64,000 nucleotides of DNA from Corallochytrium limacisporum Hawaii (taxonomy: Eukaryota > Protista > Pluriformea), in contig PDIP01000037.1 in assembly GCA_002811645.1 (NCBI GenBank), forward strand, positions 7,345-71,344. Direction: 5' to 3'. The first letter of the stretch is position 1. The number at the start of each line of letters is the position of its first letter. The notes under the pieces were generated by a model. It made no database searches. It was given only the letters and a program-made list of their open reading frames with translations, and was not told the origin of the DNA. The translations under genes were made by a program, and so were the position numbers. This document shows positions 9,520 through 48,613 of this stretch, in pieces.

Positions 9520-10396
9520 TTAGGCGACCAGAACGCAGGCACCGCCGACGGCATTGATCTTGCGCTCAGCCTTAGAGCTGAAGTAGCGAGCCTTGACGAT
9601 CATAGGCTGCTTGGGGAGCACACCCTTGCCGAGGACCTTGAAGTAACCGGCCTTGGTGACATCAATGACAGGAACAGGCTCTCCCTTCTTGGCGTTGGCA
9701 TACTTGTCCTTGGTCTCAGCAGACACCAGAGTCCAGAGCTTGTCCAAGTTGATGGTGGGCACGTAGTAGTGCTGGTTCAACTTGTGGAAGTGGCGCATAC
9801 CGACCTTACCGAAGTAACCAGGATGGTACTTGTCCATGTTGATGCGATGATGGTGCTGACCACCAGCCAGACCACGACCACCGGGGTGCTTGCGGTGCTT
9901 ACCGATACGACCGCGACCGGCAGAGACGTGTCCGCGCTTCTTGCGGTTAGCTTTCAGACGAGTGCAAGGCTGTAAATGTAAACAAAACAAAATTAAAGAA
10001 AACAATTGTTAGTATGACCGTTCCATGATATAACTCCCAGTGTTGATTTGGATATTGCTATCCGATTCTGAAGGGTACAGATGTATGCAAAACCGAGTCT
10101 TTCGAAGTAAAAATGGTGGTGTCGCCCAGAGCAGTCAATAACATGATAAAGATGGAAAATAGGTCATATCCAGATGCCAGCAGAATACCAGTGACCTTTC
10201 GTATCCTGTATACAGGTCCCTGTTATAAACCTACGTTCCAAGCCCCAAAACTGTTAGTTTGACGGCAGGCAGATTCTCATGCAAGCCCAGTTTTGCGTTA
10301 CCAATGTACTTCCTGCTACCGCGAATCATTTATTCTTCAGCCCCAGTATGCTGTACATTATTCCCTACAGATGCTATACGCGTGTGTACTTACCAT
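9520..10396 (-). CDS. RPL27A: 60S ribosomal protein L27a (uL15); exon 1 = ATG 10396-10394, exon 2 = 9969-9520
   Basis: [25 protein letters not shown]...[24 protein letters not shown] followed directly by GTAAGT donor; TACTAAC branch site near 10014-10008, polypyrimidine tract and TACAG acceptor restore the frame M-PCTRLK. Confidence 0.95.
9970..10393 (-). other. Spliceosomal (U2-type) intron of RPL27A, 424 nt
   Basis: GTAAGT...TACTAAC...T-rich tract...TACAG; phase 0, immediately after the start codon. Confidence 0.9.
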
Positions 10397-11051: not shown

Positions 11052-12752
11052 TTAAGTGCCACCCCCCTGACCTTGGGTAGCCAGCACCTCGTCCACATCC
11101 TGGAGAATGCCCTGTAGGTAGGTCACTCGATTGGCGAGATTTTGGGCCACCGTATCGCTTTCAATGTTATTACGGTCCTCAATGCTTAGACTGGCAATTT
11201 GACGATGTATGTTGGTAGAGGAGAGTGTGGGGTTGGTGTTCTCCTTATCTGCTCCGGTTCCTGAAAAGTGTGTGGAAGCGGAAGTGGTTCGGGGCTGGAC
11301 GGTTTGTCGAAGCGGCCCACTGCGAGCCATTGCCATTTCGGTCTTCACGAGCTTGTAGTCCTTGGCGATAGCACGGTCCAAAGCATCACTCAGTTGTTTA
11401 ATCGGGCTGCTAGGGCCAGATCCAGGGTTTCGCGGGATTCCTTTCGTCGGGCTGCGATCCGCAATCTTTCCAGACGGCCTGAGTTTGGCAGGGCTGGGAG
11501 ACGCGCTGTTGTCGAAGTCGATGGCATCAAAGGAATCGTCATGTGCGCCTAAGACCGGCGACGGCGGAGGACGTTGAGATTTGGTTGTCTCTGCAGCAGC
11601 CCTGCCCGGCTTCTGTGCTGCGACAGAAGGTGCCATGTTCTGCGCATGTGGCTCTGGCACCCGCGGCGCTATACCCTGGGTGAAGAATTCCGACATAATG
11701 TCCCGCACTATGCCACGCACTTTCCGTACTTCTTCGTACTGCGCCCCTGCGCTGTTGCTTGGGCTTGTTCTTCTGCCCGAGGTGTCCATTGTACTCAGGG
11801 TGCCATCAGCCTTTGGCGGCAACGTTGCGGACCCAGGTGACCTGTCTTCCACGAGAGGAGTTGGTACTTCCTGTGCTGGTGCAGTCTGCATTCGCGTTTG
11901 GTGGTGCTGCTGCTCCGCAACTTGCGGGGGCACACCGCGTCCAGAGTACACGCCCGTGTGCAACCCACCTGAGTACCGGCGTCTTACAGGGGATACCGGT
12001 TCTTCCCGTGGTTGGTAGCTGTACGATGGAATGTTCTGTGTAAGGGTAGTGGCCGTTGTGTTGATCGGTGTGCTTGGATCCGTCGCTGGTGGCTCGGGTT
12101 GAGCAGTCTTATCGGGATACGATTGCATGGGCAAGGATAAAGGCGGCTCTGCGTCTAGAGAGTCCAGGATGCGACGTCTCTGTAGCTTCTGCCGCCGTTG
12201 CTTGCGCCATTGAACCAGCGGATCATCGTCACCGCCAGGAACAAACTGTAGCCTGCGGCTCATGCCAAACGACTCACTTGATGCAGTGGGTAGCGTACCA
12301 TACATTCCCGTTGTCCTGCTGGTCACGGGCATGGTAAGCCCGTGAATTATTTGTTCTTCCCCTGATTCCTGCAGGTCTGCTTCAGCTAAACCCCGACTGA
12401 GTTGCTTCTGTGCCTCAGATCGCATATCGGTGGGCTGCTCGGGTTGGGATCCTGATGATGTTGCAGGCGCCGTCTGAGCTGCACGTGTTGCTCGGTCCTG
12501 AGCTGCCCAAAGGTTCTGTGATGCGGTTCGCCGTTCACCAGCTACTTCCTGACTCCACCAGAAACCGCTCATTTTCGAATCTGACGGTAATGACTCCATA
12601 CTGTCGGTTCCTGGAAGCATTGCATGCCCTGCATTTGAAGATATCGCTGAATCAAGTACATTCCGTTGGCCTCGCGGCAATGGAGGGTCCGAGCGAAAGC
12701 GGTCTACCAAGGTGGCAATCACCTCTCCTTTAGGGGGTGACGAGGACGTCAT
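11052..12752 (-). CDS. Low-complexity P/S-rich protein, PROSER3-like
   Basis: Short blocks resembling animal PROSER3 in the same order: 'VIATLVDRFRSDPPLPR', 'GFWWSQ', 'DDDPLVQWRKQRR', C-terminal 'ESDTVAQNLANRV..LQ..LQDVD'. First in-frame ATG is 12752. Confidence 0.6.
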   Translation of the reverse strand: MTSSSPPKGEVIATLVDRFRSDPPLPRGQRNVLDSAISSNAGHAMLPGTDSMESLPSDSKMSGFWWSQEVAGERRTASQNLWAAQDRATRAAQTAPATSSGSQPEQPTDMRSEAQKQLSRGLAEADLQESGEEQIIHGLTMPVTSRTTGMYGTLPTASSESFGMSRRLQFVPGGDDDPLVQWRKQRRQKLQRRRILDSLDAEPPLSLPMQSYPDKTAQPEPPATDPSTPINTTATTLTQNIPSYSYQPREEPVSPVRRRYSGGLHTGVYSGRGVPPQVAEQQHHQTRMQTAPAQEVPTPLVEDRSPGSATLPPKADGTLSTMDTSGRRTSPSNSAGAQYEEVRKVRGIVRDIMSEFFTQGIAPRVPEPHAQNMAPSVAAQKPGRAAAETTKSQRPPPSPVLGAHDDSFDAIDFDNSASPSPAKLRPSGKIADRSPTKGIPRNPGSGPSSPIKQLSDALDRAIAKDYKLVKTEMAMARSGPLRQTVQPRTTSASTHFSGTGADKENTNPTLSSTNIHRQIASLSIEDRNNIESDTVAQNLANRVTYLQGILQDVDEVLATQGQGGGT

Positions 12753-12979
12753 TATGTATCTAGTGTGTTTACTATTGTATAATGTGACACACTCTTTATG
12801 TCCCGATATGTACACTACATTGTTACGAATTAACAGGCCTTCCAAGGGTGCGCATGCAGTTATTAATATCAATGTGATTCACAGTACCCGGCCGTTTTCA
12901 ACCGGCCGTTTTCAACCGATTACAGAATGCACGGCCTAAAAGTCCGTCATCATTATCACTATATCTACGAAATACCTTC

Positions 12980-13830
12980 CCTTTTGGTCTGCCCGCAGAT
13001 ATGCCTGTGGCTTTCTCCTTCGCGGTGGCTTGCTCTCACTCTCGCCCCTGGCAGATCGGGCCCGCGGAGAGCCCGGCAAAAAAAAAAAGGAGGAGAGCAC
13101 CGAGGGAGAGACCCACCCAGCCCCCTTGCGATGGCGCGCGTCCGTGTGTGAGGGGTTTTTGGCGGGAAAAGCCACATTCGCAAACGCACCCACAGCGGGC
13201 ATAAGGAGGCAGAGGGACCGGCCAAGTGTGGGCACCGCTCCCTCCCTGTCCCACTCGTAGATTCATTGGGGATAAAAACAGGCCCCCAAACACGTTCGCG
13301 AGCGGGGACCCTTATGTTTTCCTGGTAGATTTTCTGCACCGACCACCAGTGCAGCCAATGGGGGGGCATCGAGGGGAGAACAAGGAAACCAGTCGAAACA
13401 ATTGAAACACAGAATGGGTCCGTGGAAGAGAGAGGTCGCGTTCGGAGGGGCCTGATTATATATACGGAATATTTATACATATCTCATTCGAACGCGATAA
13501 TTTGTTACTCATTCTATAATATGATCAAAATATCCGCTGTATTATCATACGGAATAATTTAAATCAAAGGCAGATGGAAAGGCAGCGAAGTGGTTCGTCG
13601 CCGTGTCTCTGACGTGGGGACCTTTCGGAGGGCAGGGTGGGGATCTGGGAGTAGGGGCGGTGTGTGCGACGCAGTGAGACCCCCTTCTGGGGGGCGCAGG
13701 GGGGAAAGGGAAATACAAGGCGAAGAGTCGGGGCTAGAACGGGGGAGGGAGAGCTGAGTTCGGGGCGCGCCGGTGCGACGGGAGGAAAGCCACATTGCAA
13801 ACGTGTCCCGGCTGTGTGGGCTTCCTGGCT
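12980..13830. promoter_or_regulatory. Bidirectional promoter island (PROSER3-like / LNPK); representative of similar islands near 8150-8760, 21300-21520, 25450-26170, 28300-28700, 32900-33080, 34680-35020, 38150-38230, 41600-42130, 47380-48400, 49740-50130, 51700-51930, 54830-55120, 58120-58320, 62270-62660
   Basis: G/C and A/T homopolymer runs, CpG-rich sequence, (CA)n and GGGGCC motifs occur upstream of gene starts and not in the short convergent gaps. Confidence 0.55.
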
Positions 13831-14063
13831 CTTCTTGCGGAGCTTCTTGTCCCGCTGGATGTGACTTACAAAAAGGTACATCTTTACATGATGTTTTGAT
13901 CATATTCAGCCACTGGGTGCTGTGAAAGCATATTTGATAGCCCATAGACCAATAAGCGATAGCATTCTTGAGTGCTTAAAGAAGATGCGACGTACCTGAG
14001 GGATACCCTAGGTGGATAGTTGCAAACGTTCGGAACAACTTTAAGTCTTCTAGGTTCTGAGCC

Positions 14064-15746
14064 ATGGGACAACGCATTGGTCGTTTGTTTGGCCGTAAGG
14101 CGGCACCGAAGGTGGGACCGTATGATGAGGCATTGAACCTAGACCAGGAGGTGCGCAAAATTGAGGCGCAGCTTTTGGCGGTGCGGGGTAGTCAACGGCG
14201 TCTGCAGCGGTATGCTCTGACCGGTACCATTGCAATATTTGCTGTGATCTTGCCGCTCTATGTTCTCCTGATGAGCTTTAAGTATGAATTGTGGGAGGTG
14301 ATAATCACACCAGACGAGATCAAGAACTGGGACGCACTGCAGTCATGGCTTGTCGGGCCCGGATTGGTATACATCGTAATCCCGGTGATGGTGATTAGTA
14401 CACTAAACACCTTACAGAAAGTTGTAGCAGCTAACCAGGCCTCACAGATAGATGAATTGAACCTTTCACTCAAATTGATAAACAGTCGGCATAGGGAGGC
14501 TGCGGCCAAACTCTGGCAGGACGAGACCATGCGGAAGATCTACGAAATGATGAAGAAATACGATCGTTCCCTGGACCGCCGCAAAGCACCAGCGAACCAG
14601 ATTACTTCTCAGCAAGCCGCAGCGCGGCAACAGCAGATCTGGCAGCGCCAGCAACAGGCCATTGCAAGACAGCAACAGTATCAGTACACTCAGGCACATG
14701 TAGCAGCCATCCGCAGCCAGAGCCCAGCCTTTGGAGCCGGCACACGAATGGCACAGACCCCGCAAGTGAAGCAATTGACACAGGGAAGTAAGGAGGATGC
14801 CAAGGGACACTACGGCACCCCCGCCACGGCCGCATTGGGAGGCAGTGACAGCACAAAGACCGCCGATGACGGAGCCCGCGTTCAATCGCATGCACACGAA
14901 CCGAAGGAATCAGTGGCATCTCAGCCGGACATAGATCCCATGGCTTTTGCACGAACCAGTCTACAACCCCCTTTCCCGCTACCTAATCGTGAGCCGCCCT
15001 CCACCCTGGATCGTATCGTGAATTGGATCACCCAGGATGGGGAATCGCATCGCTACGCTCTAATTTGCCGGCACTGTCACGCACACAACGGTCTGGCGCT
15101 GCCGGAGGAGTTCCGGACAATTTCGTTCAAATGTTTTGCATGTTGGGGTTTCAACCCACCGCGGGATCGACCGGGCAGTCTGGGTGGTGCCGCCGGAAGT
15201 ACACCAATGCCTCCATCGGCGTCATCTGCGACCGAGGCGTTTGATGATGGAGATAGCAAGCCCCAAATGATGGCTCTCGACGATGATAGCGGTAGTGACG
15301 GGGAAGGCTCAAAATTGACAGCCGCTCAGCAGGAACCCTCCGTCCGTGGACGGTTTTCTATCGATGCCAACGCCGTACGGGCGGCGCAGGACGCCGCCGA
15401 GACGACTGAGGAAATGAGTAAAGGCCAAGCGCATCCTCGCAGGAGCAGGAGTATGCAACCCATGCCCCACTCAGATGGAGACGAAGGGGGGCAACAGAAA
15501 AAGGAACCTTCCACCAAGACAGGCACAGGTATGCGGAGCGTCAGCGCAGAGCCGAAGCAGGATTCAATACGGAGCCGGAAAAGCAGAAAACGCGACCAAG
15601 GCGTCGAGGACATACAGGGGCTTGAGCCAATGAATGAGGGCAATGGAGACGGGAACACTGAAGACGAGGATTCACCGGGCAACCTGGACCGCTTTTCAAG
15701 CATTGAAATCAACGACGGTCGTGGACCAAAGGACGGTCCCAAGTAG
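14064..15746 (+). CDS. LNPK: Lunapark ER junction protein
   Basis: MG N-myristoylation-type start, two TM helices, coiled coil, zinc ribbon RYALICRHCHAHNGLA...FKCFACWGFN. Confidence 0.92.
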   Translation: MGQRIGRLFGRKAAPKVGPYDEALNLDQEVRKIEAQLLAVRGSQRRLQRYALTGTIAIFAVILPLYVLLMSFKYELWEVIITPDEIKNWDALQSWLVGPGLVYIVIPVMVISTLNTLQKVVAANQASQIDELNLSLKLINSRHREAAAKLWQDETMRKIYEMMKKYDRSLDRRKAPANQITSQQAAARQQQIWQRQQQAIARQQQYQYTQAHVAAIRSQSPAFGAGTRMAQTPQVKQLTQGSKEDAKGHYGTPATAALGGSDSTKTADDGARVQSHAHEPKESVASQPDIDPMAFARTSLQPPFPLPNREPPSTLDRIVNWITQDGESHRYALICRHCHAHNGLALPEEFRTISFKCFACWGFNPPRDRPGSLGGAAGSTPMPPSASSATEAFDDGDSKPQMMALDDDSGSDGEGSKLTAAQQEPSVRGRFSIDANAVRAAQDAAETTEEMSKGQAHPRRSRSMQPMPHSDGDEGGQQKKEPSTKTGTGMRSVSAEPKQDSIRSRKSRKRDQGVEDIQGLEPMNEGNGDGNTEDEDSPGNLDRFSSIEINDGRGPKDGPK

Positions 15747-15848
15747 AACGTCAGATAGCGAATAGTCGTCTAGCAGCAAATACAAAGCACTACGCTCCTT
15801 AGTTCAGTTTTAAGTAGTATACTCTTTTCATGAATCTACACAGATGGT

Positions 15849-18800
15849 CTAGCCAATAACATGTACCCCACTCTCCCCCCGCAGCAGGACAGCGCACGCC
15901 GCGGAGACGGGGTGTGTGCTTAGGTTCAAGGCGGGATGATCCATCTTCTCCGCGAGCAGGCGGTCAAGTTCCCGCTTAAGTCCAGCCACCAAAGTCGCAA
16001 TGCGACCTGTGGCACCGAAGCGGATCCACCCGTCAAGCACAATTTGGTTGCGCTCGTGCAGTGGTTCCACACGGCGGGTAAAGAGCAACAGAGCGTACGG
16101 ATGGAGTACCGTCGAATCCCGCAAGTAGACCTTCGAAGTACTGATCTTTTCATTGAAGGTTAGGTAGGGGCACTTCGCGTAGTTGTTCTCCTTAAAGTTG
16201 ACACTGCCTGGGTGCACAAAGACGCGTTCCCGGCTGCGCGTGTAGAACTTCATGGCAGAGGCTTCGTGCTCCTTCAGTACCGCTCCCTGCGCGGACTGGA
16301 TGTATTGCTTCTCGGGCATCTTGACGTAAGCGATATTCGGGTACAGACCGGCCATCATGGCTGCTTTGATGACACTATGGCTGTCCGCATTGATGTTGTA
16401 GGCCTCAATGGCGGCCAGCTGGTCATCGGCGCGGTTCCTTCCGTACGCGGCTGTCGGAACGAACCCTTTGTCTGCGAGAATATTGAGATACTGCTGCCGG
16501 GAGTCCTGGATGTTCAGCATGGATTGCATCGATAGGAAGTTCTCCTCTAGGTAGTGCCGTTCTTCCTTGCGAGAAGCCTTTTCGGCGCGTAGCTTGCGCC
16601 AACCCGCAAATGCATTGTGGCAGGCAATGAGATCGCTGGCTGAGCCATCGACGAAGCTCTGTTTGGCAGCCTGGGCCTCTGCGCGCTTATCGGAAGGACT
16701 AACGAACGGACTACGGCTCGAAACACAGGCCGCAATGGTCAGGATCGGGTCAAGGCATTGCAGGATGGTGCCGTAGAGCATCATCTTGGCAATTCGCGTG
16801 TCTACCGGCAGTTCCGCCATGTGGCGGCCAAGAGCGGTCATAGTCAGATCGTCACCGCCGCCGTGCTTCTCTACTAAGGCCCCGATCTCGAGCAAGTCGC
16901 CAATGGCTTCGTCGATTGCTTCGGTGGAAGGCGGCGTGAGGCACCGCAGGAGCAGGGCGTCAGGGCGTGAGTAGCCCATGGCTGCGACCATGAGGCAGAG
17001 CTGCTCGAGGGAGGTGCGCTGAATCTCAGGCATGGAAAAGTCACGCATCTGACGATGGTGGAAGTTACGATTAAACAAACGGATGGCATGTCCCGGGCGA
17101 ACACGACCCGCACGACCCTTCCGCTGATTCGCAGAGGCCTTGGAAATCCAGACCTCTTCCAGTAGGGTCATGCCACGCTTCGGGTCGTACTGAATCTCCT
17201 TCTCCCGGCCGGCATCAATAACGTAGACCGCGTCGTCTACTGTTACGGAAGTCTCAGCAATATTTGTGGTCAGCACTACCTTGCGCTTGCCTTTCGGCGG
17301 TCTCGCAAATACCAGGCGTTGCTCCTTCGCTGGTAACGAAGAGTGCAAGGACAGAATCAGTAAGTTGTGTTTCGAGGCCACGCCAGTACTTTTCAGCATT
17401 TGCGCAGCCTGTTGAATCTCGGACAGACCGGGCAAAAACACAAGGATTGCACCAGTCAGCTTCTCGTCTTCCTTGCGATCTTTGGGCACCAGCGCCTCGC
17501 AGATGTGCGTTACCGCAGCACTGATGGCTTCGTAGGGTATGTCCGGCAACCGTTGGCGTTGGACGGTGCGCGCTGGATCCAGGCTCTTGGACTGGCCACT
17601 TCCGCCATGCCTGCGAGAGGACTGGTCGACCTGCGCTTCCCAGTCAAGGTCCTCGCTCTCATCGCTGGAGGAGTTGACCTCCGCGTGCAGGGTAGTATTG
17701 GAATCCAGAGCATCTGCCTTGCTGTTGTTGTTCTTGCCACCTCTCTTGTTGTCTTCCCTATCTCTAACTGGCTTTTCCTGCTTGTTCGGTCCATCACGTT
17801 TGATGCGGTTGCCCATGGCATCAAACTGTGACACAAGCCGCTCGACAGCATCTTGGTCATCGTCGTCCTCGGCCATCGACTGATCGCGCAGACCCATCAT
17901 CTGTGGCGTGAATACGTTGGGCAATTCGTCCCAGTGCGTCACCGTGACCGGGAAAGTGCGACCTGGAATCGACAGCACCTTCGGCTGAAATGCCTTAAAA
18001 TATGACGCAAAAAGCTGAGCGTCAATGTCCGCCGACATGAGCACGACTTTGACGTGCGGGTTGTGAGGTAGTGCTTCGCGGAGCAAGGCCAGCAGCACAT
18101 CGCTGTTGACGCTGCGTTCGTGGACTTCATCCACGACGATGTGACTGACACCGCTGAAGGCGCGCTTTATGCGCTTCTGAATCATCTTATCGCCGCTATC
18201 CACTGCACTTATCTCCACATTGGCACCACCGACCATCTGCCGGAGCAGAACACCTGTCGTGCAGTAAAGTACGCGGGTTTTCGCGCTACGCTTGGTATCC
18301 AACTTGACGGAGTAACCAATGGTGTCTCCAATCTTTTCGTTCTGCTCCCATGCCACACGTTCGGCAATGGACATCGCTGCGATACGACGTGGCTGAGTGC
18401 AGAGTACCCGACACTTTGCCCCGGCGCCGGCTTCCATCATGTCCTCAAGAATCAGCTGTGGTACCTGTGTGGTCTTACCGCAACCGGTCGCACCGCTGAT
18501 GATGGTCACCCTGGTGGAGCGTACTGTGGAAATCACCTCCTCCCTTTGCTTTACACTCGGCAAAGCCTTCCGCATTAGTAAGCGCTCACTGTAGGTGGCG
18601 TCCGTAGCCAATTTACTCAGGTAGTCCACTACAGCATCATCACCAGATTTGCCGGACAACATGGCAGCCTGATCGTTGCTGCGAGCAGTCTTCCTCTTAT
18701 TCTTGGCTTCCCCGGCTCGATCTTTCAGTTTTTCCACATCCAAGGATTCGCTTGTCACCGCACTCTGGTTTAGGTGTAGGGGACGGAAGTCTTTGATGGG

Positions 18801-20567
18801 CGGTGGCTTTTGCACGACCTCCTCCAGGATCCTTTGGCCCCGGTCAATGAGCTCTGATCCAAAAATCATCTCCGTAGCGGTCAACTCCACAGCTGCTTCC
18901 ACCAACTTTTCTGTGACATGCAGGCAGATGTAAGCAGGGAGAAGAGGGTGCGTCACCGCAATCACTGGCGGTTCTTTCGGGTACTTGGAGCCGACGGGGA
19001 ACCGCATTGTAATTGAGGCGTCACCACCCAGTACGTACAGCTCCATAAAGTTATCGGCCTCCGAAGATGACAGTAATCTTGTTCGCTTTTCCTCTTCTGT
19101 CTCGTCCACAGGCGTTTGCTGACCCTTCCCACCCTTACCTTTCTTTTGCTGCTGCTGCTGCTGTTGTTGCTTTCGTTCCACTTTCTTCTTGACCTCATCC
19201 GGAGGACTAATGCGGAATTCCCATTCTCTTGCCCCTGCCGCCGTCTTCTTCTTGGCAGAGAACTGTATGGGAGCACATACAAACATGTGGCCCATGAGCT
19301 CCTCCTCTTCGGCAATCTCATCCATATGGTCCTCGTCGGATGTGCCGGTAAAGGAGGCGATCAATGTCTCCGCGGCCTCACGATCCTGTCCCAGAAGTAC
19401 TTCTGTCTTGGATGGGTGCAGAAGACACCACTGTAGCAACCGACGTGCCCGGTCTTCCATGCTGTCCGACAAATCCATCGCTTTGCTGACTACGTCAGTA
19501 GGGTATCCCTGTGCCTGCAGACGGGCAAGCGTTTTCGCACGCGCAATTCCACCCTCTGCGTCCCACGTATGGATCTGTAGGGTTCCCTTGGGTCGGTAAC
19601 TGAAGGGCAGGTCTGCCTCTGCCACATGGATACACAGCCAGTTCAGTATCTCGGTAACATCGAGGCCACAGACATCCATGGCTTCATGTACATGTACCGC
19701 GAGAAAGCCTTCTCTGCGCACGTACTTGTACACGCTGTCCTTATCACCTCCAGGCCCCAAAGCTTGCCCGGATCCTCCTCCATCCACAGAGGTGCCTGGT
19801 GATGTCCTTCCACCGTTCCGCTCGCTAGCCTTGCTCTCCTCCACGGCCTGCGCAGAGTTGCGCAGAGCAATCTGCCTGAGGATGCTCTCAACCTTGCTCC
19901 GTGTCTGTTCACTCATGTAAATGTTGGGTAAAGGCCGCTTGAGCTCACGTTCGCGACGCTTCCTCTGCTTCTCCAGTCGCAGCTCCTCTTTCGCATCCGG
20001 TTCCGGCTCTGCAAAGGGGTCATCAGCAGTTTTCTTATCCCTCAGAGATGGATTCTTCTGGCGCTCAGCCTCTAGCTCTTTCCAGTAGTCCCGAAACGCA
20101 TGCGGCAGCAACATGATACGATTTGTGTGCCATGCAACCTTGTGCAAGGCGTAGACCGAGGCCCAGTGCTTCGCATTCTGTACCGTGTCCGCTTCCTTTT
20201 TGGGCTTCAGATCCACCGTGAGGTGACCCCGCTTCGGATCACGTTTCCCCAGACGGATCACACAAACGTGATTCTGTCCGTTGTTCCGTTCGAAGACCAT
20301 GAATCCTGGTTTATCCCAGCCGTTCTGGCGCTGACAATACTCGTAGAGCTGTGCTGTAGGCGTTTTGCCGGTCCAGTTTTTCAGCAGTGGATTGTCCTTG
20401 CGGTCCGGGCGCTGGCCAGTCGGGTGTGGCTGCGATCCTTTGCCACCCTTGCCACCCTTACCTCCTGGCGGGTCGCTGGTGGATGCTTTTCCTTTGTCCT
20501 TGCCTTTGTCCTTACCTTTATCGCCGGGCCCTGCACCAGCGGTGCTGCTGCCTTTGTTCTTGCCCAT
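15849..20567 (-). CDS. DHX57: DExH-box RNA helicase, DHX57/DHX29-like (dsRBD-like, UBA-like, RWD, helicase core, HA2, OB)
   Basis: GATGCGKTTQ, TQPRRIAA, DEVH, TTNIAETSVT, QRKGRAGR; RWD 'FPVGSKYPKEPP'. Confidence 0.88.
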   Translation of the reverse strand: MGKNKGSSTAGAGPGDKGKDKGKDKGKASTSDPPGGKGGKGGKGSQPHPTGQRPDRKDNPLLKNWTGKTPTAQLYEYCQRQNGWDKPGFMVFERNNGQNHVCVIRLGKRDPKRGHLTVDLKPKKEADTVQNAKHWASVYALHKVAWHTNRIMLLPHAFRDYWKELEAERQKNPSLRDKKTADDPFAEPEPDAKEELRLEKQRKRRERELKRPLPNIYMSEQTRSKVESILRQIALRNSAQAVEESKASERNGGRTSPGTSVDGGGSGQALGPGGDKDSVYKYVRREGFLAVHVHEAMDVCGLDVTEILNWLCIHVAEADLPFSYRPKGTLQIHTWDAEGGIARAKTLARLQAQGYPTDVVSKAMDLSDSMEDRARRLLQWCLLHPSKTEVLLGQDREAAETLIASFTGTSDEDHMDEIAEEEELMGHMFVCAPIQFSAKKKTAAGAREWEFRISPPDEVKKKVERKQQQQQQQQKKGKGGKGQQTPVDETEEEKRTRLLSSSEADNFMELYVLGGDASITMRFPVGSKYPKEPPVIAVTHPLLPAYICLHVTEKLVEAAVELTATEMIFGSELIDRGQRILEEVVQKPPPIKDFRPLHLNQSAVTSESLDVEKLKDRAGEAKNKRKTARSNDQAAMLSGKSGDDAVVDYLSKLATDATYSERLLMRKALPSVKQREEVISTVRSTRVTIISGATGCGKTTQVPQLILEDMMEAGAGAKCRVLCTQPRRIAAMSIAERVAWEQNEKIGDTIGYSVKLDTKRSAKTRVLYCTTGVLLRQMVGGANVEISAVDSGDKMIQKRIKRAFSGVSHIVVDEVHERSVNSDVLLALLREALPHNPHVKVVLMSADIDAQLFASYFKAFQPKVLSIPGRTFPVTVTHWDELPNVFTPQMMGLRDQSMAEDDDDQDAVERLVSQFDAMGNRIKRDGPNKQEKPVRDREDNKRGGKNNNSKADALDSNTTLHAEVNSSSDESEDLDWEAQVDQSSRRHGGSGQSKSLDPARTVQRQRLPDIPYEAISAAVTHICEALVPKDRKEDEKLTGAILVFLPGLSEIQQAAQMLKSTGVASKHNLLILSLHSSLPAKEQRLVFARPPKGKRKVVLTTNIAETSVTVDDAVYVIDAGREKEIQYDPKRGMTLLEEVWISKASANQRKGRAGRVRPGHAIRLFNRNFHHRQMRDFSMPEIQRTSLEQLCLMVAAMGYSRPDALLLRCLTPPSTEAIDEAIGDLLEIGALVEKHGGGDDLTMTALGRHMAELPVDTRIAKMMLYGTILQCLDPILTIAACVSSRSPFVSPSDKRAEAQAAKQSFVDGSASDLIACHNAFAGWRKLRAEKASRKEERHYLEENFLSMQSMLNIQDSRQQYLNILADKGFVPTAAYGRNRADDQLAAIEAYNINADSHSVIKAAMMAGLYPNIAYVKMPEKQYIQSAQGAVLKEHEASAMKFYTRSRERVFVHPGSVNFKENNYAKCPYLTFNEKISTSKVYLRDSTVLHPYALLLFTRRVEPLHERNQIVLDGWIRFGATGRIATLVAGLKRELDRLLAEKMDHPALNLSTHPVSAACAVLLRGESGVHVIG

Positions 20568-20582
20568 GCTGTCACCACAAGG

Positions 20583-21170
20583 TTATTCCGTACCGCAGTG
20601 CCTCCGGAGCAAATCACAAAATTTAGAAATCTTGTCCGCTCGTGGTCCAGCCAACAATTGATGCAGACGACTCACTCTCTGGTCGCCCGATATGTTTGGC
20701 TCTCCCGTGTCAGCCTCTGCCGCAGACTCCAAGAGTACAATGGCTTCCTGCACCTCACGGTCCTTTAAGATCTCCCGGATCTCGGTGTTCCCTTTCAGTG
20801 CCACAAGGACTTCTGGCTTGACGCGGGGCAGAATCTCGTCCCCGTCACACAGCTGTCCGGGTGAGTCTGGCACGTCTATTAATCTGAGGTCGGCCCTCTG
20901 CTCCTTGGCCTTTTCCTGGTCGGAGGGCTGCTGGTTCGCCGCGTGCTCAGATTCCTTGTGCTTTTTGAAGCAAGGCACACTGCAATACCGCACCTTCTTC
21001 TCCTTGCACTGTGGACAACGATAGGGGGCTTGTTCTTTTCCACAGACCACACACCCTTGCTCGGCGTTTGCTGCTTTCAGGGCCGGATCTCCTGATTTGG
21101 CCCGCTTCTGCGCCGAGGGATCAGTGTTTGAGGCAGACCGCTTGCGCGAATGCCGATACCTGTTACCCAT
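20583..21170 (-). CDS. ZNHIT3: Zinc finger HIT protein (ZNHIT3/Hit1-like, box C/D snoRNP assembly)
   Basis: CVVC...YRCPQC...RYCSVPCFKKH zf-HIT motif followed by a short helical C-terminal domain. Confidence 0.8.
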   Translation of the reverse strand: MGNRYRHSRKRSASNTDPSAQKRAKSGDPALKAANAEQGCVVCGKEQAPYRCPQCKEKKVRYCSVPCFKKHKESEHAANQQPSDQEKAKEQRADLRLIDVPDSPGQLCDGDEILPRVKPEVLVALKGNTEIREILKDREVQEAIVLLESAAEADTGEPNISGDQRVSRLHQLLAGPRADKISKFCDLLRRHCGTE

Positions 21171-21189
21171 GGACCACGACCATTACCAT
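21163..21189 (-). promoter_or_regulatory. Candidate uORF (MVMVVVHG*) overlapping the ZNHIT3 start codon out of frame
   Basis: ATG GTA ATG GTC GTG GTC CAT GGG TAA; two ATGs, with the stop lying within the first 8 nt of ZNHIT3. Whether it is transcribed depends on the unknown TSS. Confidence 0.45.
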
Positions 21190-21646
21190 CAAATATATTT
21201 AGTATCACAAACAAAAGTTCAGGTTTCTTGCTTTTAAAAGATTGTCAAAGATTTGAGAACTCGTTCTCTGGTCTGTCCGGGAATGGCCGCACAAGTATCA
21301 GTTCCCAGGCGCAGCCCCTGCAGTTCTGCGCGTGCCCAGCGGAAATACCACCCACCCACACACACACACACCCCAACCTCCCGGGGACACCTGCTGATGG
21401 CACCCACCCTGCACACCGCCCGCTCCCCTCCTCCCCCTTCCCCCCTCCCTCGCGGGGGCCGGCGGGGCCGGGGGAGGGGGAGTGGGTTTGTTCTACACCC
21501 CCAGCGCGGATCCAGGGTCAGCGACCGCAACTGAATGCAGCATTCAACAAGGAAGAGTGGGCTGGAAAACACATCCAATTGATACTCCCATATGATCCGT
21601 AGTTTCAACACATTATAACTGTACAGTTTCGATACTTGGTTTCTTT

Positions 21647-24600
21647 TTATTCCTTCTTGGTGGTGGTCGCTGTTGTTGCCGTGCCATTCGGTAAAGACTT
21701 TGAGTTCGTGGAACTTCTGTCACCATTCTGGCCCGAGTTCGCGCCCTGAGCAAGACTCTCCTTTGCGCGGGCGATCTCGTGTTGGACAAGGAGTTTCCTA
21801 CTCTTGAACACACGTGGGGCAAAGCCAGAGGACTCCAGAGTGACAGTGTCCTTATCTCCGGCGTCAGCAATGCCGTTCATTGCATCCTCCGCGTTGGTAT
21901 GCTCCACGGGCTCACCAGCTCCCTCGTCATCGCTGCGTGCTGTGGACGAACGGCGGCGGCGTCCCGGGCTCCGTGGGGTGTTCGGAGACACAGGAGTCGT
22001 GGCACCGTTCGAAACGTGGCCACTGTTTGCAACACCAGCGCCACCGTCCGTCGATGCTCCAGTCTCGGAGGCTGCACGGCTGCGGCCAGGAGACGGTGCA
22101 GCAATGGCCTGCACAAATTGCTGGTGGCGCTTCTTCTCGGCTGTTTCGAGTTTCAAATGCCTCTGCAGGTACGCTTCGTCGGACATTTCCTCGTCTGAGA
22201 CGGACGTGGGTACTTGCCGCTCCTTGTTGGCATCAGCATCCGCACTTGCTCCGCCCTTTTCCGTCGCGGGAGGTTCGTGCTTGCTATCCTCCTCCTCGGT
22301 GTGTCCCTGTGCAGAATGGCGCATCGAGCGGCGCGGCGTGACGCCGGTGGACGAAGCCTTCTTCTCTTCAGGCTTCTTCTCGTCGACCTTCTTCTCCTCA
22401 GCTTTCTTCTCTTCAGGTCCCTTCTCCTCAGTCTTCTCTGCAGCGTTTACCGCGGCTGCATCTGCAGCTGTTGCCGGGACGGTCACTGCGGCCTTGGAAG
22501 GATTCACCTCCCGCCAGTGAGGTGTCTCAATGTCCTTGTAGTCGATTTTGTCGATGCGATTCGCTGCAATACCCGACACCTGCGAAGGCAGAATGATGTT
22601 GTCCATTTCGTACGCTGTGGAACGCCTTCGCTTCTTCTCCTCGCTCTTATGACTCGCCGTTTCACCAGGGGTAGTTGCACCTGGTGTGGTTGGAGCACTG
22701 CGCTGGTCCTTCTGAGAGCCAGACTCGGAGTCGGCACGCTTCCGGCCTGGCGATCCCGGGACATTGGCCCCTCCAGTGTGGTCGCCGGTGGCCTTGCGCT
22801 TGCCCGTCAGGGTAACCGTGGCCATCTTCTTAACGCTGGCCTTTTTCTTGCCCGAAGCGGCCGCATCGGCCGCTCCCTTCGCTGCAGCTGCCCTTCTGCT
22901 CTTGTCTGCCATAGCTTTAACCTGGTCTGCTGTCCATTTTCGGGCGGCCCCATGTGCGGAGCGCAGACCGGAACTGCTTCTCTGCACTCGGGGTGCGTAC
23001 CGGACACAGTAATTTGGAAGATCCAGAGGCATGGAAAAGATGGGATGGTAGTGGTCATCGATTTGCGCTGCCTTCTCGTTCAAGTGGGCAGCTTCCGTCA
23101 GCTGAGGCTCAAACTGCATGGCAATCAAGCGACGGTGCCGGTACGTCTTCCGACTGCCGCGCTTGCGGAAGCGCCATAGGAGAGTGCGCGCACTGACGTC
23201 TCCCTTCTGCAAATCACTTTCGGCTTCAAAGGTGCGATCCACCCGCTCCAAAGTTTGGAAGTTGGCCTTTTCCATCCGAATCTCCCGGTACTTTGTATCA
23301 TAGTGCGCTATGCGCTTGTCCAGGTGCTGGATGCTACGTTCGAGCCAGGTCCACCGCCACGCAAGCTGCCGCCTTGAGTAGTTCCACTGACGGCGATGCG
23401 ACAGAGGAATGCTTTGCTTCATCCGCTGCTCCGCTTCGATATTCTCTGCTTCACTTTCCGGGTCGCTCACATCAGTGGCTTCTTCGTCAATATCCCGAAT
23501 GAGCTCGTGTTGCCATTTCTGCATGCGCTTGGTCAGTTTGCGGGCCGGGTCCGGCAAAATTTTTACACCGTCGGGAGTAAACAAATTCGGATACCTTGTG
23601 CCCGGCACTGGGGCCGGCAATTCTGCACGATGGGCATGAACGTACCGCATCATTTGCGTGCACAGGTGGGCATGCAGGTACTCATACTGATGCCGCCGTA
23701 ACTGCTTCTTGATATGGTGGAGTCGCTGTTCAAGCCGCGCAGCATTCTGCAGGATGGTGTCAAGTTCCATCTCCTCGGGGGTTAGTTTTTGCATGGTGCT
23801 TGGCACGGTACCTCCCATGATGGGCGACATGCTTCCCACATCTCCAAATCCTGCCATGGCTGCCTCAAAATCATCCGCACCGATATCCGGAATATCCAGC
23901 CCTTCCATGTTAACGTCACCGAGCCCGAAATCCATGTCCAGGTTGAGATCAGTACTCAACATGTCATCCTTCCGCACCGGAGCCGCCCCAGCAGTCGCGT
24001 CCCCGAACCCAGCCATAATGTCTCCAGTCACACTCATGAGTCCGGATGATCGTCCCAGTTGCTGCAGGTCCAGCTTCGTTAAATCATCCGTGCTGATTGA
24101 GATCCGCCCCGGGCTATCCAATACAATTCCAGTGCTTGACCCCTGGTTCGACGCACTCGCGGAGGTTTCACCAAAGCTAGGAATCTTGAATTCGTCCGCT
24201 GCCGTTGGCTTCTTGGCCACACTTGGGACGGTCTGGGCGGCGTCTGCCTTCGGTGCGGTGACATCTGTAGCAGAACGCATCGATGATGGCATTGATGACA
24301 TTGTCTTCCGCCGCAGCGGTGACGGAGGTGGTGCCCCGTCCTTGCCCACCGTCGATGACGTCGATGACGTAGATGGCCCGCGAGCCGATGGCCCTGCTCC
24401 CAGCGCAGGGGTCGCTCCCGTCTGAGTCGGAGACCGCAAAGGGCTCGTCTTGCTGAAGGATGTGTTGAGAAGACTGTCAAAGTCCACGGTATTACTGCCC
24501 AGCAGTCCTTGGATACTTCCTAGGTCGGGAATTTCTTCCCCCAGTCCCAATGGATTGGTTGACGGCGAGCCCTTGCCGGAGTCATCTCCGATAATGCTTC

Positions 24601-24934
24601 CGATCAATGCACTGGTGTCACTGTTCACGTCTTCGTTTAAAATTTTTGATATACTTGCGTCGAGGGCCGACACTTCCGCACCAATTGACGGTTCTGTTTC
24701 CTTACCCTTCCCAGCGTTCGCCTTGGACGAAAGTGGTATTCCCGGAGGGACAGATACGGAAGATTTCCTTGCCGTTCCAGCACTTGGTTCGACATCTTTC
24801 TGTTCTTTAGTACTCGTATTCTGTCCCGTCTGACTTAGATTTTGTGATCCTTCCCCAGTACTTGCTGTGGGTACGGCTGTGTTCTGCTTTCCAGGATCCT
24901 TCACCGACCCGTCGTCGGCGTCGTCGCCCACCAT
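21647..24934 (-). CDS. KANSL1: KANSL1/NSL1-like subunit of the NSL (MOF) acetyltransferase complex, PEHE domain
   Basis: 'DEEATDVSD', 'W...RRQLAWRWTWLERSI..LDKRI..YD..YREIR', WIN-like 'SARTL', 'HYHPIFS', 'YEMDNIILP', PEHE 'KDIETPHWR...EEMSDEAYLQRHLKLE.AEKKR'. Confidence 0.8.
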   Translation of the reverse strand: MVGDDADDGSVKDPGKQNTAVPTASTGEGSQNLSQTGQNTSTKEQKDVEPSAGTARKSSVSVPPGIPLSSKANAGKGKETEPSIGAEVSALDASISKILNEDVNSDTSALIGSIIGDDSGKGSPSTNPLGLGEEIPDLGSIQGLLGSNTVDFDSLLNTSFSKTSPLRSPTQTGATPALGAGPSARGPSTSSTSSTVGKDGAPPPSPLRRKTMSSMPSSMRSATDVTAPKADAAQTVPSVAKKPTAADEFKIPSFGETSASASNQGSSTGIVLDSPGRISISTDDLTKLDLQQLGRSSGLMSVTGDIMAGFGDATAGAAPVRKDDMLSTDLNLDMDFGLGDVNMEGLDIPDIGADDFEAAMAGFGDVGSMSPIMGGTVPSTMQKLTPEEMELDTILQNAARLEQRLHHIKKQLRRHQYEYLHAHLCTQMMRYVHAHRAELPAPVPGTRYPNLFTPDGVKILPDPARKLTKRMQKWQHELIRDIDEEATDVSDPESEAENIEAEQRMKQSIPLSHRRQWNYSRRQLAWRWTWLERSIQHLDKRIAHYDTKYREIRMEKANFQTLERVDRTFEAESDLQKGDVSARTLLWRFRKRGSRKTYRHRRLIAMQFEPQLTEAAHLNEKAAQIDDHYHPIFSMPLDLPNYCVRYAPRVQRSSSGLRSAHGAARKWTADQVKAMADKSRRAAAAKGAADAAASGKKKASVKKMATVTLTGKRKATGDHTGGANVPGSPGRKRADSESGSQKDQRSAPTTPGATTPGETASHKSEEKKRRRSTAYEMDNIILPSQVSGIAANRIDKIDYKDIETPHWREVNPSKAAVTVPATAADAAAVNAAEKTEEKGPEEKKAEEKKVDEKKPEEKKASSTGVTPRRSMRHSAQGHTEEEDSKHEPPATEKGGASADADANKERQVPTSVSDEEMSDEAYLQRHLKLETAEKKRHQQFVQAIAAPSPGRSRAASETGASTDGGAGVANSGHVSNGATTPVSPNTPRSPGRRRRSSTARSDDEGAGEPVEHTNAEDAMNGIADAGDKDTVTLESSGFAPRVFKSRKLLVQHEIARAKESLAQGANSGQNGDRSSTNSKSLPNGTATTATTTKKE

Positions 24935-47047: not shown

Positions 47048-48613
47048 AGTTCAAAACCAGGAGTTCTTATGTTGGAAATGATCTGAGTTTAATTTTACTT
47101 TTCTGGGCCTTTTCACAGCCTCTTTTTGCCCTTGGTGTTTCCTGGGATCACGGTCTAGTCTATAACCACACGTGTATCCCTTGTCAGACCTCTCAAGGAA
47201 CTTGTACCTTCAAGCGTTCCCCTGGGCATTGACATGCCTTCCCCCATCAGGGAAACAGACCGGTGACCTCCCTACAATGAAGATTCTACAGCTAGCTAAG
47301 CTAGCTACCCTACACAAAACTGGCTCTGGCCCTAGGAATATGTATGTATGCTGCCCGGTGCGTTGGCACCATTGCTAGAAACATGTATCGTCAACCCCGC
47401 CTTCCACCCTCCGCCCGCCCCTGGTCCGCTTGCTACCGAATCCCATGGTTTCGCCCGATTGGCTGGAGGAAACTCTGTCCGACTGCGTCCCCCTCCCTCC
47501 CGTTTTTCTTTGCCTCCAAGGGGGGGGGGTGGGGGGCGCGGGTCTGTATAGTCCAACTACGGCGTTGGCGGTAGTTTTTTTTTTGCCAGCAGAAGAAAGG
47601 GGCGCTGTTCGCTCGGACCAGATCTGCTCACCCTTCCGCCTTGGCAACGGGTGGACAGCGCACGAAAGCCAGTGGTCGGACACCCTACGGACTCGCGCGC
47701 TTTGGGCGTGGCTTACTCTACTAGTACTAATTTTTCTTCTGTTTTGGTTTCCTCCAATTTCTTTTTTTTTTTTTGTGATTCCATTTAGTTTCCTTGTAAC
47801 TTTTCCGCGTTCCATTTTCTTTTCTTGGCTTCGCTCTGGTCTGCCCTTTCCAGGTGGTCTCTAGCAATTTCCTCGTCTCCCTCGAAGGTAGTGTTGAATC
47901 GCTGAGTGGTTCCAAGCCCTTTCCGGTCCCTTGCGCACCGCACCCGCTCCTAAGCGCTTCCTCCGCTCCTCCTCACACCTCCCCCACCTTCGGCTTTTCT
48001 CTTGAGCGTCAAACAGCCCCCATTGGCCCCAGGCACCAAGGTCCTTCTCCTCCCGGGGGAGGGGGATTAAATCAACACCGCATAGATACCCCGTGCTGTC
48101 CTTGTTTCACTATGGTACCCCGGTCCTTAATGTCACCATTGATTTGATTAAATCGGATTCAACCATTGTATGTGGAAATCCATTGATTTGCTTCAGGGCC
48201 GGTGATTACTTCCGTGTCACCTCTGCTGCCGTACCAGCAGCGGAGCCCGGAGCCCCTTGGGCGGCAGTGCATGTGTTCCCACCTTTACGAAGAATATTTG
48301 GTACTTACTGTCCATCCCCACGCAAAGGGGGGGGTTTGGCGGGCTGACAAGAAACAAGGGGGAAGGGGGAGGGGGGGGGCGTTAGGATGGAATGGAATGG
48401 GGTCCAAGGGTTGGAGCGAAAAGGACGGGCGCCACCATGTTTTCATTGAATGTCCGTGTCATCGTTCGCACCCGAACGTCCACAGCCAGAGGTACTTCAA
48501 TACAGATCATAGAAATGACATTTTCGACACCTTTACCCTGAACTCTTGTGGGACCTTCCAGTACTTAGTCGATATGTGTGTCTGTGAATTGCACGGAAAT
48601 GGAAATGGTGAAC

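What the first reader, a model, noticed from the sequence alone, without database searches (positions are those of the whole stretch)
15849..21189. Probable bicistronic ZNHIT3-DHX57 mRNA with a leaky-scanning signature
Seen: the ZNHIT3 stop (20585-20583) is 15 nt from the DHX57 ATG (20567) on the same strand. Other tandem genes here are separated by roughly 480 nt or more and have their own promoter-like island; DHX57 has none. I found no ATG in any frame between the two start codons (no 'cat' on the + strand from 20568 to 21167, ~600 nt), where about 9 would be expected at uniform composition. ZNHIT3 has a weak start context (T at -3, gtccATG) and DHX57 a strong one (A at -3, G at +4, acagcATGg). 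Established: this combination characterises leaky-scanning bicistronic loci in green algae and viruses. Inference: one mRNA co-expresses a snoRNP assembly factor and an RNA helicase, which may point to an undescribed polycistronic system in this lineage.
Basis: partly seen in the sequence, partly recalled or inferred. Interest (0 to 1): 0.88.

Follow-up and report, generated by a model that had tools for sequence, protein, structure and literature searches.

The report
Two-gene mRNA in animal relative
In a single-celled relative of animals, a snoRNP assembly gene and a ribosome-binding RNA helicase gene lie 15 bases apart and most likely share one messenger RNA; the first gene has no internal start codons, so ribosomes can slide through to the second, a device known from green algae but not found reported for this lineage.

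Summary
Observation confirmed. ORF1 (21170-20583, minus strand) is the genome's only full ZNHIT3/Hit1. It stops 15 nt before a 1572-aa DExH helicase. The 600 nt between the starts hold no ATG (8.9 expected; 0 of 5000 shuffles; about 4e-4 after allowing for this Met-poor family). Contigs from two public runs, probably RNA, cross the junction unspliced, begin at 21283/21285 and leave the upstream intergenic gap empty; one spans both ORFs (5492 nt). Short-read contigs cannot prove a single molecule. The genome is almost certainly Corallochytrium limacisporum. Two amendments. (1) The leader holds an 8-codon uORF overlapping ZNHIT3's start, so ORF2 may be reached by reinitiation as well as leaky scanning. 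(2) ORF2 is a yeast Ylr419w/Ucp12 ('Dhx29')-type helicase rather than a clear DHX57. Best reading (0.62): a scanning-dependent bicistron like those of green algae. Main rival (0.2): a second start site just past ZNHIT3's AUG. The scan has already noted similar pairs elsewhere in this genome (SCOC-PIGF was followed up); I confirmed close adjacency for three. A known mechanism in a new lineage. Self-regulation by the helicase is speculative.

The parts
21342..21500 (.). G/C-run plus (GT)n island, the putative promoter region of the unit
   Evidence: such islands are enriched in non-coding DNA and lie upstream of 40 of 43 genes. It falls in the stretch not covered by RNA contigs, where the tool also skipped a repeat (21342-21382). 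Promoter function is inferred.
21171..21285 (-). Transcribed 5' leader, at least 115 nt
   Evidence: Contigs of two runs end at 21283 and 21285 with no joints or loose ends. Contig ends are not mapped start sites.
21191..21201 (-). TATA-like AT-rich word about 28 nt upstream of the ZNHIT3 ATG; could place a second start site at or just past that ATG
   Evidence: Sequence; function untested.
21163..21189 (-). 8-codon uORF (MVMVVVHG) with two ATGs (21189, 21183), out of frame; its stop overlaps ZNHIT3 codons 2-3
   Evidence: Both contexts are weak by the native matrix (-2.3, -1.4). It lies inside the RNA contigs. Not statistically exceptional: 10 of 41 predicted starts have an overlapping uORF.
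20583..21170 (-). ORF1: ZNHIT3/Hit1 box C/D snoRNP assembly factor, 195 aa (zf-HIT at aa 38-69, helical C-terminal domain at about aa 119-192); its only Met is the start
   Evidence: Pfam, homolog alignment, PDB profile hits 5L85 and 2YQQ, AlphaFold model and weak Foldseek matches, sole full-length copy in the genome.
20568..21167 (-). 600-nt ATG-free corridor; all five Y/H/N/D codons followed by G end in C
   Evidence: Still ATG-free with the three variants of run X1.
20568..20582 (-). 15-nt inter-ORF spacer, in frame and stop-free
   Evidence: Crossed unspliced by contigs of both runs.
15849..20567 (-). ORF2: 1572-aa DExH helicase with dsRBD (PF24385), UBA-like (PF24899), RWD, helicase, HA2 and OB domains; Ylr419w/Ucp12 ('yeast Dhx29') type; strong start context
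   Evidence: domain order as described for yeast Dhx29.
18027..18035 (-). Helicase motif III reads SAD instead of SAT
   Evidence: SAT in 132 of 132 homologs. Both RNA contigs agree with the DNA here.
15792..15848 (-). 3' trailer; inferred contig ends at about 15792 and 15797
   Evidence: Inferred from contig offsets, assuming collinearity beyond the stretch that was laid.

Best explanation
One promoter upstream of about 21285 makes an intronless mRNA of about 5.5 kb that carries ZNHIT3 and then the helicase. Scanning 40S subunits meet three AUGs, all in weak context. Those that skip the two uORF AUGs and take the third make ZNHIT3. Those that skip all three (leaky scanning), or that translate the 8-codon uORF, stop just past ZNHIT3's AUG and resume scanning (reinitiation), cross about 600 AUG-free nt and start the helicase at its strong AUG. 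Selection to keep this path open explains the missing AUGs. Shown: the geometry, ATG absence, start contexts, protein identities and continuous RNA-like coverage. Inferred: single molecules, translation of both ORFs, and the share of each route.
For: ATG absence beyond chance. Weak-weak-weak-strong order of start contexts. One 5492-nt contig over both ORFs and a second run bridging the junction, 5' ends within 2 nt of each other, no joints, and an empty upstream intergenic gap. No promoter-like island for ORF2. No AT-rich trailer after the ORF1 stop (AT 0.45 against a median of 0.61). The constrained codons sit at positions 35-111, so the constraint starts near the 5' end of ORF1. No structured or IRES-like element. 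Same signature as algal bicistrons (PMC11892635). Three other tight same-strand pairs confirmed by coordinates.
Against: Short-read contigs merge overlapping transcripts and drop minor forms, and the runs are only guessed to be RNA. There are no long-read, CAGE, ribosome or protein data. ORF1 (588 nt) is longer than the algal medians of 291-357 nt. No conserved ZNHIT3-helicase linkage was found in the few ortholog loci read. The uORF may be incidental.
Confidence: 0.62

Rival explanations
1. Start-site choice: one promoter region with two start sites. The long isoform (from about 21285) makes ZNHIT3. A shorter one starting at or just past ZNHIT3's AUG uses the rest of ORF1 as a 600-nt AUG-free 5' UTR and makes only the helicase.
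For: It also requires an ATG-free ORF1. There is a TATA-like word about 28 nt upstream of the ZNHIT3 ATG. Long ATG-free stretches outside CDS occur in this genome. Contigs cannot resolve nested 5' ends.
Against: It does not need ORF1's weak context. The core promoter rules of this organism are unknown, and there is no direct evidence of a second start.
Confidence: 0.2
2. Termination-reinitiation after ZNHIT3: ribosomes finishing ORF1 restart 15 nt on.
For: Very short spacer. This mode is known after long ORFs, mainly in viruses (PMC10275272).
Against: It does not explain the ATG-free ORF1 or its weak context. No structured element near the junction.
Confidence: 0.06
3. Stop-codon readthrough gives a ZNHIT3-helicase fusion (a zf-HIT plus helicase layout also exists in DDX59).
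For: The ORFs are in frame across a stop-free spacer, and the base after the stop is C.
Against: The stop is UAA, the least leaky (own knowledge). In-frame by chance has probability about 1/3. ORF2 has its own strong start that matches homolog N-termini. Other noted pairs have 5, 7, 13, 14 and 26-nt spacers (unchecked notes). It does not explain the missing ATGs.
Confidence: 0.04
4. Operon-like processing: trans-splicing, or a cis intron ending at the CAG 1 nt before the helicase ATG, yields a monocistronic helicase mRNA.
For: A CAG lies right before the ATG. Other scan notes raise acceptor-like words before starts. Donor-like words are mildly enriched in leaders.
Against: No joints or loose ends. 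YAG within 20 nt of starts is not enriched (20 of 45, against 17-24 of 45 further upstream). The site lacks the TACTAAC branch and long pyrimidine tract of the window's one clear intron. It would not need an ATG-free ORF1.
Confidence: 0.05
5. Chance: two independent genes with overlapping UTRs in a compact genome and an accidentally ATG-free ORF1.
For: 14% of ZNHIT3 homologs lack an internal Met; the locus was selected after the fact.
Against: Joint P about 4e-4, together with a 15-nt gap where 498 nt or more is usual, no promoter island and no trailer.
Confidence: 0.03

Closest known systems
Green algal bicistronic mRNAs translated by leaky scanning (Gallaher 2021, PMC7896298; Duenas 2025, PMC11892635)
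   Same: Small ORF1 and large ORF2, short spacer, weak ORF1 and strong ORF2 context, AUG depletion before ORF2, no sign of trans-splicing or an IRES.
   Different: Holozoan host. Longer ORF1 (588 nt) and leader (at least 115 nt). An out-of-frame uORF overlaps ORF1's start. The terms ZNHIT, helicase and DHX were not found in the 2025 paper's supplements (these may list gene IDs only). Long-read, chromatin and proteomic proof is lacking here.
uORF reinitiation control (GCN4/ATF4 type; PMC10275272)
   Same: A short uORF followed by a long AUG-free stretch to a main ORF; an overlapping uORF represses the ORF it overlaps.
   Different: Here the bypassed ORF is itself a conserved protein gene. Stress regulation is untested.
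Animal bicistronic genes (Drosophila sloth1/sloth2, seen; human MOCS2, ASDURF-ASNSD1 and SNURF-SNRPN from own knowledge)
   Same: Two independent ORFs on one capped mRNA.
   Different: Different genes; ORF1 is usually under 100 aa. No evidence of common origin.
Yeast Ylr419w/Dhx29, S. pombe Ucp12, and mammalian DHX29 and DHX57
   Same: ORF2 has the dsRBD, UBA-like, RWD and helicase order described for yeast Dhx29, which binds the ribosome at h16 (PMC10997966; bioRxiv 2026.08.24.746666).
   Different: Motif III is SAD. It lacks the DHX57 CCCH finger and has an RWD domain that human DHX29 lacks. The ortholog loci read have no ZNHIT3 upstream.

Membership tests
Leaky-scanning bicistronic mRNA (algal type) | Two complete, conserved, same-strand ORFs with a short spacer | tested here: met
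   15 nt against 498-6307 nt for other tandem pairs.
Leaky-scanning bicistronic mRNA (algal type) | AUG depletion before ORF2 | tested here: met
   0 in 600 nt against 8.9 expected; two further AUGs in the leader.
Leaky-scanning bicistronic mRNA (algal type) | Weak ORF1 and strong ORF2 start context | tested here: met
   -1.8 against +2.5 on a native matrix from 48 predicted starts.
Leaky-scanning bicistronic mRNA (algal type) | Single mature transcripts span both ORFs | tested here: inconclusive
   Assembled contigs bridge the junction in two runs; these are not single molecules.
Leaky-scanning bicistronic mRNA (algal type) | One promoter upstream of ORF1 and one poly(A) site after ORF2 | tested here: inconclusive
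   Sequence proxies agree. No CAGE, H3K4me3 or poly(A) data; AATAAA is not the evident signal in this genome.
Leaky-scanning bicistronic mRNA (algal type) | Both ORFs translated; ORF2 output falls when ORF1's context is strengthened | not testable with these tools
   Needs ribosome profiling, proteomics and reporters.
Trans-spliced operon (nematode or kinetoplastid type) | Spliced leader or acceptor at the downstream gene | tested here: inconclusive
   No loose ends or joints and no acceptor enrichment, but contigs drop minor forms.
IRES-driven dicistron | Structured element or known IRES family before ORF2 | tested here: not met
   Folding z-scores -0.04 and -0.72; no Rfam hit. Unstructured IRESs are not excluded.
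ZNHIT3/Hit1 | zf-HIT plus C-terminal NUFIP1/Rsa1-binding helical domain | tested here: met
   18 of 40 aligned homologs hit ZNHIT3_C; the profile hits 5L85 at E 8e-13; the model's top Foldseek matches are 2YQQ and 7QDW, with weak E-values. ORF1 alone does not hit PF21373.
Animal DHX57 | Falls in or sister to the DHX57 clade; has a CCCH finger and no N-terminal dsRBD | tested here: not met
   AU p = 0.017 against the clade; dsRBD present and no CCCH hit. A long branch could mislead.
Animal DHX29 | Sister to animal DHX29; dsRBD and UBA-like N-terminus without RWD | tested here: inconclusive
   The N-terminal domains are shared, but an RWD is present; AU p = 0.056.
Ylr419w/Ucp12-type helicase | dsRBD, UBA, RWD, DExH order, and clade with fungal members | tested here: met
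   Clade support 96/100 with fungal and unicellular holozoan proteins. The yeast protein itself was not in the tree.

The most novel reading that the evidence does not exclude
Corallochytrium uses scanning-dependent bicistrons genome-wide, and at this locus a ribosome-binding Dhx29-type helicase tunes its own synthesis. Mammalian DHX29 raises recognition of upstream AUGs in vitro (PMC4872109). If this helicase did the same, it would shift ribosomes among the uORF, ZNHIT3 and its own start, a feedback like that of eIF1 or eIF5 (own knowledge) built into a two-gene mRNA. Against this: the yeast ortholog acts on elongating ribosomes, motif III is altered, and the sign of any feedback is unclear.
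Probability: 0.1. Interest if true: 0.82.

Novelty: new member of a known kind. Interest (0 to 1): 0.52.

Why it matters
If confirmed, scanning-dependent bicistronic mRNAs extend to an early-branching unicellular relative of animals. I found no paper reporting this for Corallochytrium or other unicellular holozoans. The species can be stably transfected (bioRxiv 2020.11.12.379420, title seen), so leaky scanning, uORF reinitiation and start-site choice can be separated in vivo. It has lost part of its nonsense-mediated decay machinery (PMC5560861), which suggests a testable link between NMD loss and tolerance of two-ORF mRNAs (my inference). In practice, small upstream ORFs are probably missed in its annotation.

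Tried and rejected
I did not seek the letters by another tool, so the nulls rest on 233 kb, and later genome searches returned coordinates only. In the roughly 169 kb outside the window no second credible bicistron appeared; the short-gap ORF pairs that I tested had no Pfam support. A first coding model was over-fitted and missed ORF1. Exact look-ups of both proteins were blank, as were those for Capsaspora and two other homologs, so synteny in holozoans is untested. Tiny-intron readings were rejected: a 25-nt or 107-nt intron to the CAG before ORF2 and a 27-nt intron from the first uATG all shift the frame; four in-frame donor-acceptor pairs exist on paper but no joint is seen. No IRES or RNA family was found. 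The bacterial promoter scan is not applicable. An AATAAC word over the ORF1 stop is not diagnostic of a poly(A) signal. Contig depth was not used as evidence, as the tool advises.

Full report
Source. The window lies in a 24,109,830-base assembly of 286 contigs with almost intronless genes. This matches Corallochytrium limacisporum, reported at 24.1 Mb and 0.0 introns per CDS kb (PMC5560861). Close helicase relatives include Capsaspora, ichthyosporean and chytrid proteins. The identification is an inference, but a strong one.

The observation. On the minus strand ORF1 runs 21170-20583 and ORF2 20567-15849, with 15 nt between them. The 600 nt between the two ATGs contain no ATG. Dinucleotide shuffles give 8.9 on average, none of 5000 gives zero, and ATG is the most depleted triplet. 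In 48 local CDS the rate is 12.95 per 600 nt and the longest ATG-free gap is 461. With the protein held fixed, the chance of no out-of-frame ATG is 0.0087; all five Tyr/His/Asn/Asp codons followed by G end in C, where other genes use T 56% of the time. ZNHIT3 proteins are Met-poor (10 of 73 have no internal Met), so the fair joint probability is about 4e-4. The locus was chosen for this trait, but the trait coincides with three others: a 15-nt gap where other tandem gaps are 498-6307 nt, a weak first and a strong second start on a native matrix, and no G/C-run promoter-like island for ORF2.

RNA evidence. Two 2015 runs hold the region as 13-14 Mb contig sets; the tool only guesses that they are RNA. 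In X1 a single 5492-nt contig covers the laid stretch from 17500 to 21283 and by its offset should end near 15792, so it spans both ORFs. In X2 a contig covers 20168-21285. The upstream gene's contigs stop at 21664 and 21635, leaving about 350 nt empty, as expected for RNA. There are no joints and no loose ends at the leader or the junction. X1 differs from the genome at three ORF1 sites (two synonymous, one Glu to Gly), none of which creates an ATG. The tool warns that a contig across two genes does not show a single transcript, so this supports the bicistron but does not prove it.

ORF1. It has a zf-HIT domain and aligns through its C-terminal helices with proteins of 140-180 aa, 18 of which hit ZNHIT3_C. 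The alignment profile's best PDB hits are the two human ZNHIT3 domains. The AlphaFold model has a confident finger and helical bundle, and its top, statistically weak, Foldseek matches are ZNHIT3 structures. It is the only full-length match in the genome, so it is very likely functional, and 21170 is its only possible AUG.

ORF2. Its domains are dsRBD, UBA-like, RWD, helicase, HA2 and OB, the order described for yeast Ylr419w/Dhx29, which binds 18S h16 as DHX29 does. It carries the genome's only PF24385 match. In a careful tree it joins fungal and unicellular holozoan proteins (96/100), apart from the animal DHX57 and DHX29 clades. Sisterhood with DHX57 alone is rejected (AU p = 0.017); sisterhood with DHX29 alone is borderline (p = 0.056). 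It is best called Ylr419w/Ucp12-type. Motif III reads SAD against SAT in 132 of 132 homologs, and both runs agree with the genome there.

The leader. Two out-of-frame ATGs at 21189 and 21183 open an 8-codon uORF whose stop lies just past ZNHIT3's ATG, 595 nt before ORF2's. They fall inside the RNA contigs, and both are weak on the native matrix. By established rules an overlapping uORF represses the ORF it overlaps, and short uORFs permit reinitiation downstream (PMC10275272). ORF2 therefore has two scanning routes, leak-through and reinitiation, and both need the AUG-free corridor. The uORF is not rare by my rough control (10 of 41 predicted starts), so selection on it is not shown. A TATA-like word at 21201-21191 raises the main rival, a second start site at or just past ZNHIT3's AUG, which would also demand an AUG-free ORF1.

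Rejected or weak alternatives. Readthrough is possible in frame but explains none of the signature. The CAG before ORF2 is at chance level and lacks the branch point and pyrimidine tract of the window's one clear intron. There is no IRES-like fold or Rfam match.

Other loci. Earlier scan notes list about ten candidate bicistrons in this genome, one of them (SCOC-PIGF) already followed up. By coordinates alone I confirmed same-strand adjacency for SCOC and PIG-F (401 nt between domain matches), GNAT and NTMT1 (197 nt), and GNAT and TRM10 (507 nt). The few ortholog loci read show no ZNHIT3-helicase linkage.

Comparison. The locus works like the algal bicistrons of PMC7896298 and PMC11892635 and meets their sequence criteria; their transcript-level and translation criteria are untested or inconclusive here. 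Full-text searches found no report for Corallochytrium or for a bicistronic ZNHIT3; that library is incomplete. Corallochytrium lacks most of the EJC, Smg5/6/7 and Smg8/9, which may be permissive (inference). Mammalian DHX29 reduces leaky scanning in vitro, which makes feedback at this locus conceivable but speculative.

Verdict. A real feature, probably a scanning-dependent bicistronic mRNA (0.62; about 0.88 for a shared transcription unit of some kind). A known kind of system in a new lineage. Interest 0.52.

Noticed in passing
window 18027-18035 (-): Helicase motif III is SAD where 132 of 132 homologs have SAT, and the RNA contigs agree with the genome. It may uncouple ATPase from unwinding.
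   Followed up: partly
window 21170-21063 (-): ZNHIT3 has a basic N-terminal extension of about 35 aa (NLS-like) that most homologs lack.
   Followed up: no
window 21647-24934 (-): 1095-aa ORF with a weak PEHE match (E 4e-4, below cut-off): a KANSL1/MSL1-like scaffold in a unicellular holozoan.
   Followed up: partly
window 9970-10393 (-): The one clear intron seen: it follows the ATG of a ribosomal-protein-like gene, with a GTAAGT donor, TACTAAC branch point and long pyrimidine tract (yeast-like).
   Followed up: partly
window 47448-48111 (+); L018 472-1349 (+); L008 9239-8563 (-): ATG-free stretches of 660-880 nt outside called CDS, probably long leaders or promoter regions. No Pfam match for the two ORFs tested at the first.
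   Followed up: partly
window 11052-13945 (-): Three closely spaced same-strand ORFs (128, 171 and 566-606 aa; gaps of 78 and about 90-210 nt) without Pfam matches. Could be one spliced gene, a leader with uORFs, or another multi-ORF unit.
   Followed up: partly
300 nt upstream of 45 predicted starts: The donor-like words GTGAGT, GTAAGC and GTGAGC occur 20 times against about 7 expected, hinting at 5'-UTR introns in some genes; YAG is not enriched next to starts.
   Followed up: partly
L021 1709-2779: In Spizellomyces the divergent neighbour of the orthologous helicase is a DUF2205 (SCOC) gene, the family that is ORF1 of another candidate bicistron in this genome; probably a coincidence.
   Followed up: no
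window 15746-15849: The lunapark and helicase genes converge with only 102 nt between their stops, so their 3' UTRs probably overlap, as for several convergent pairs here.
   Followed up: no
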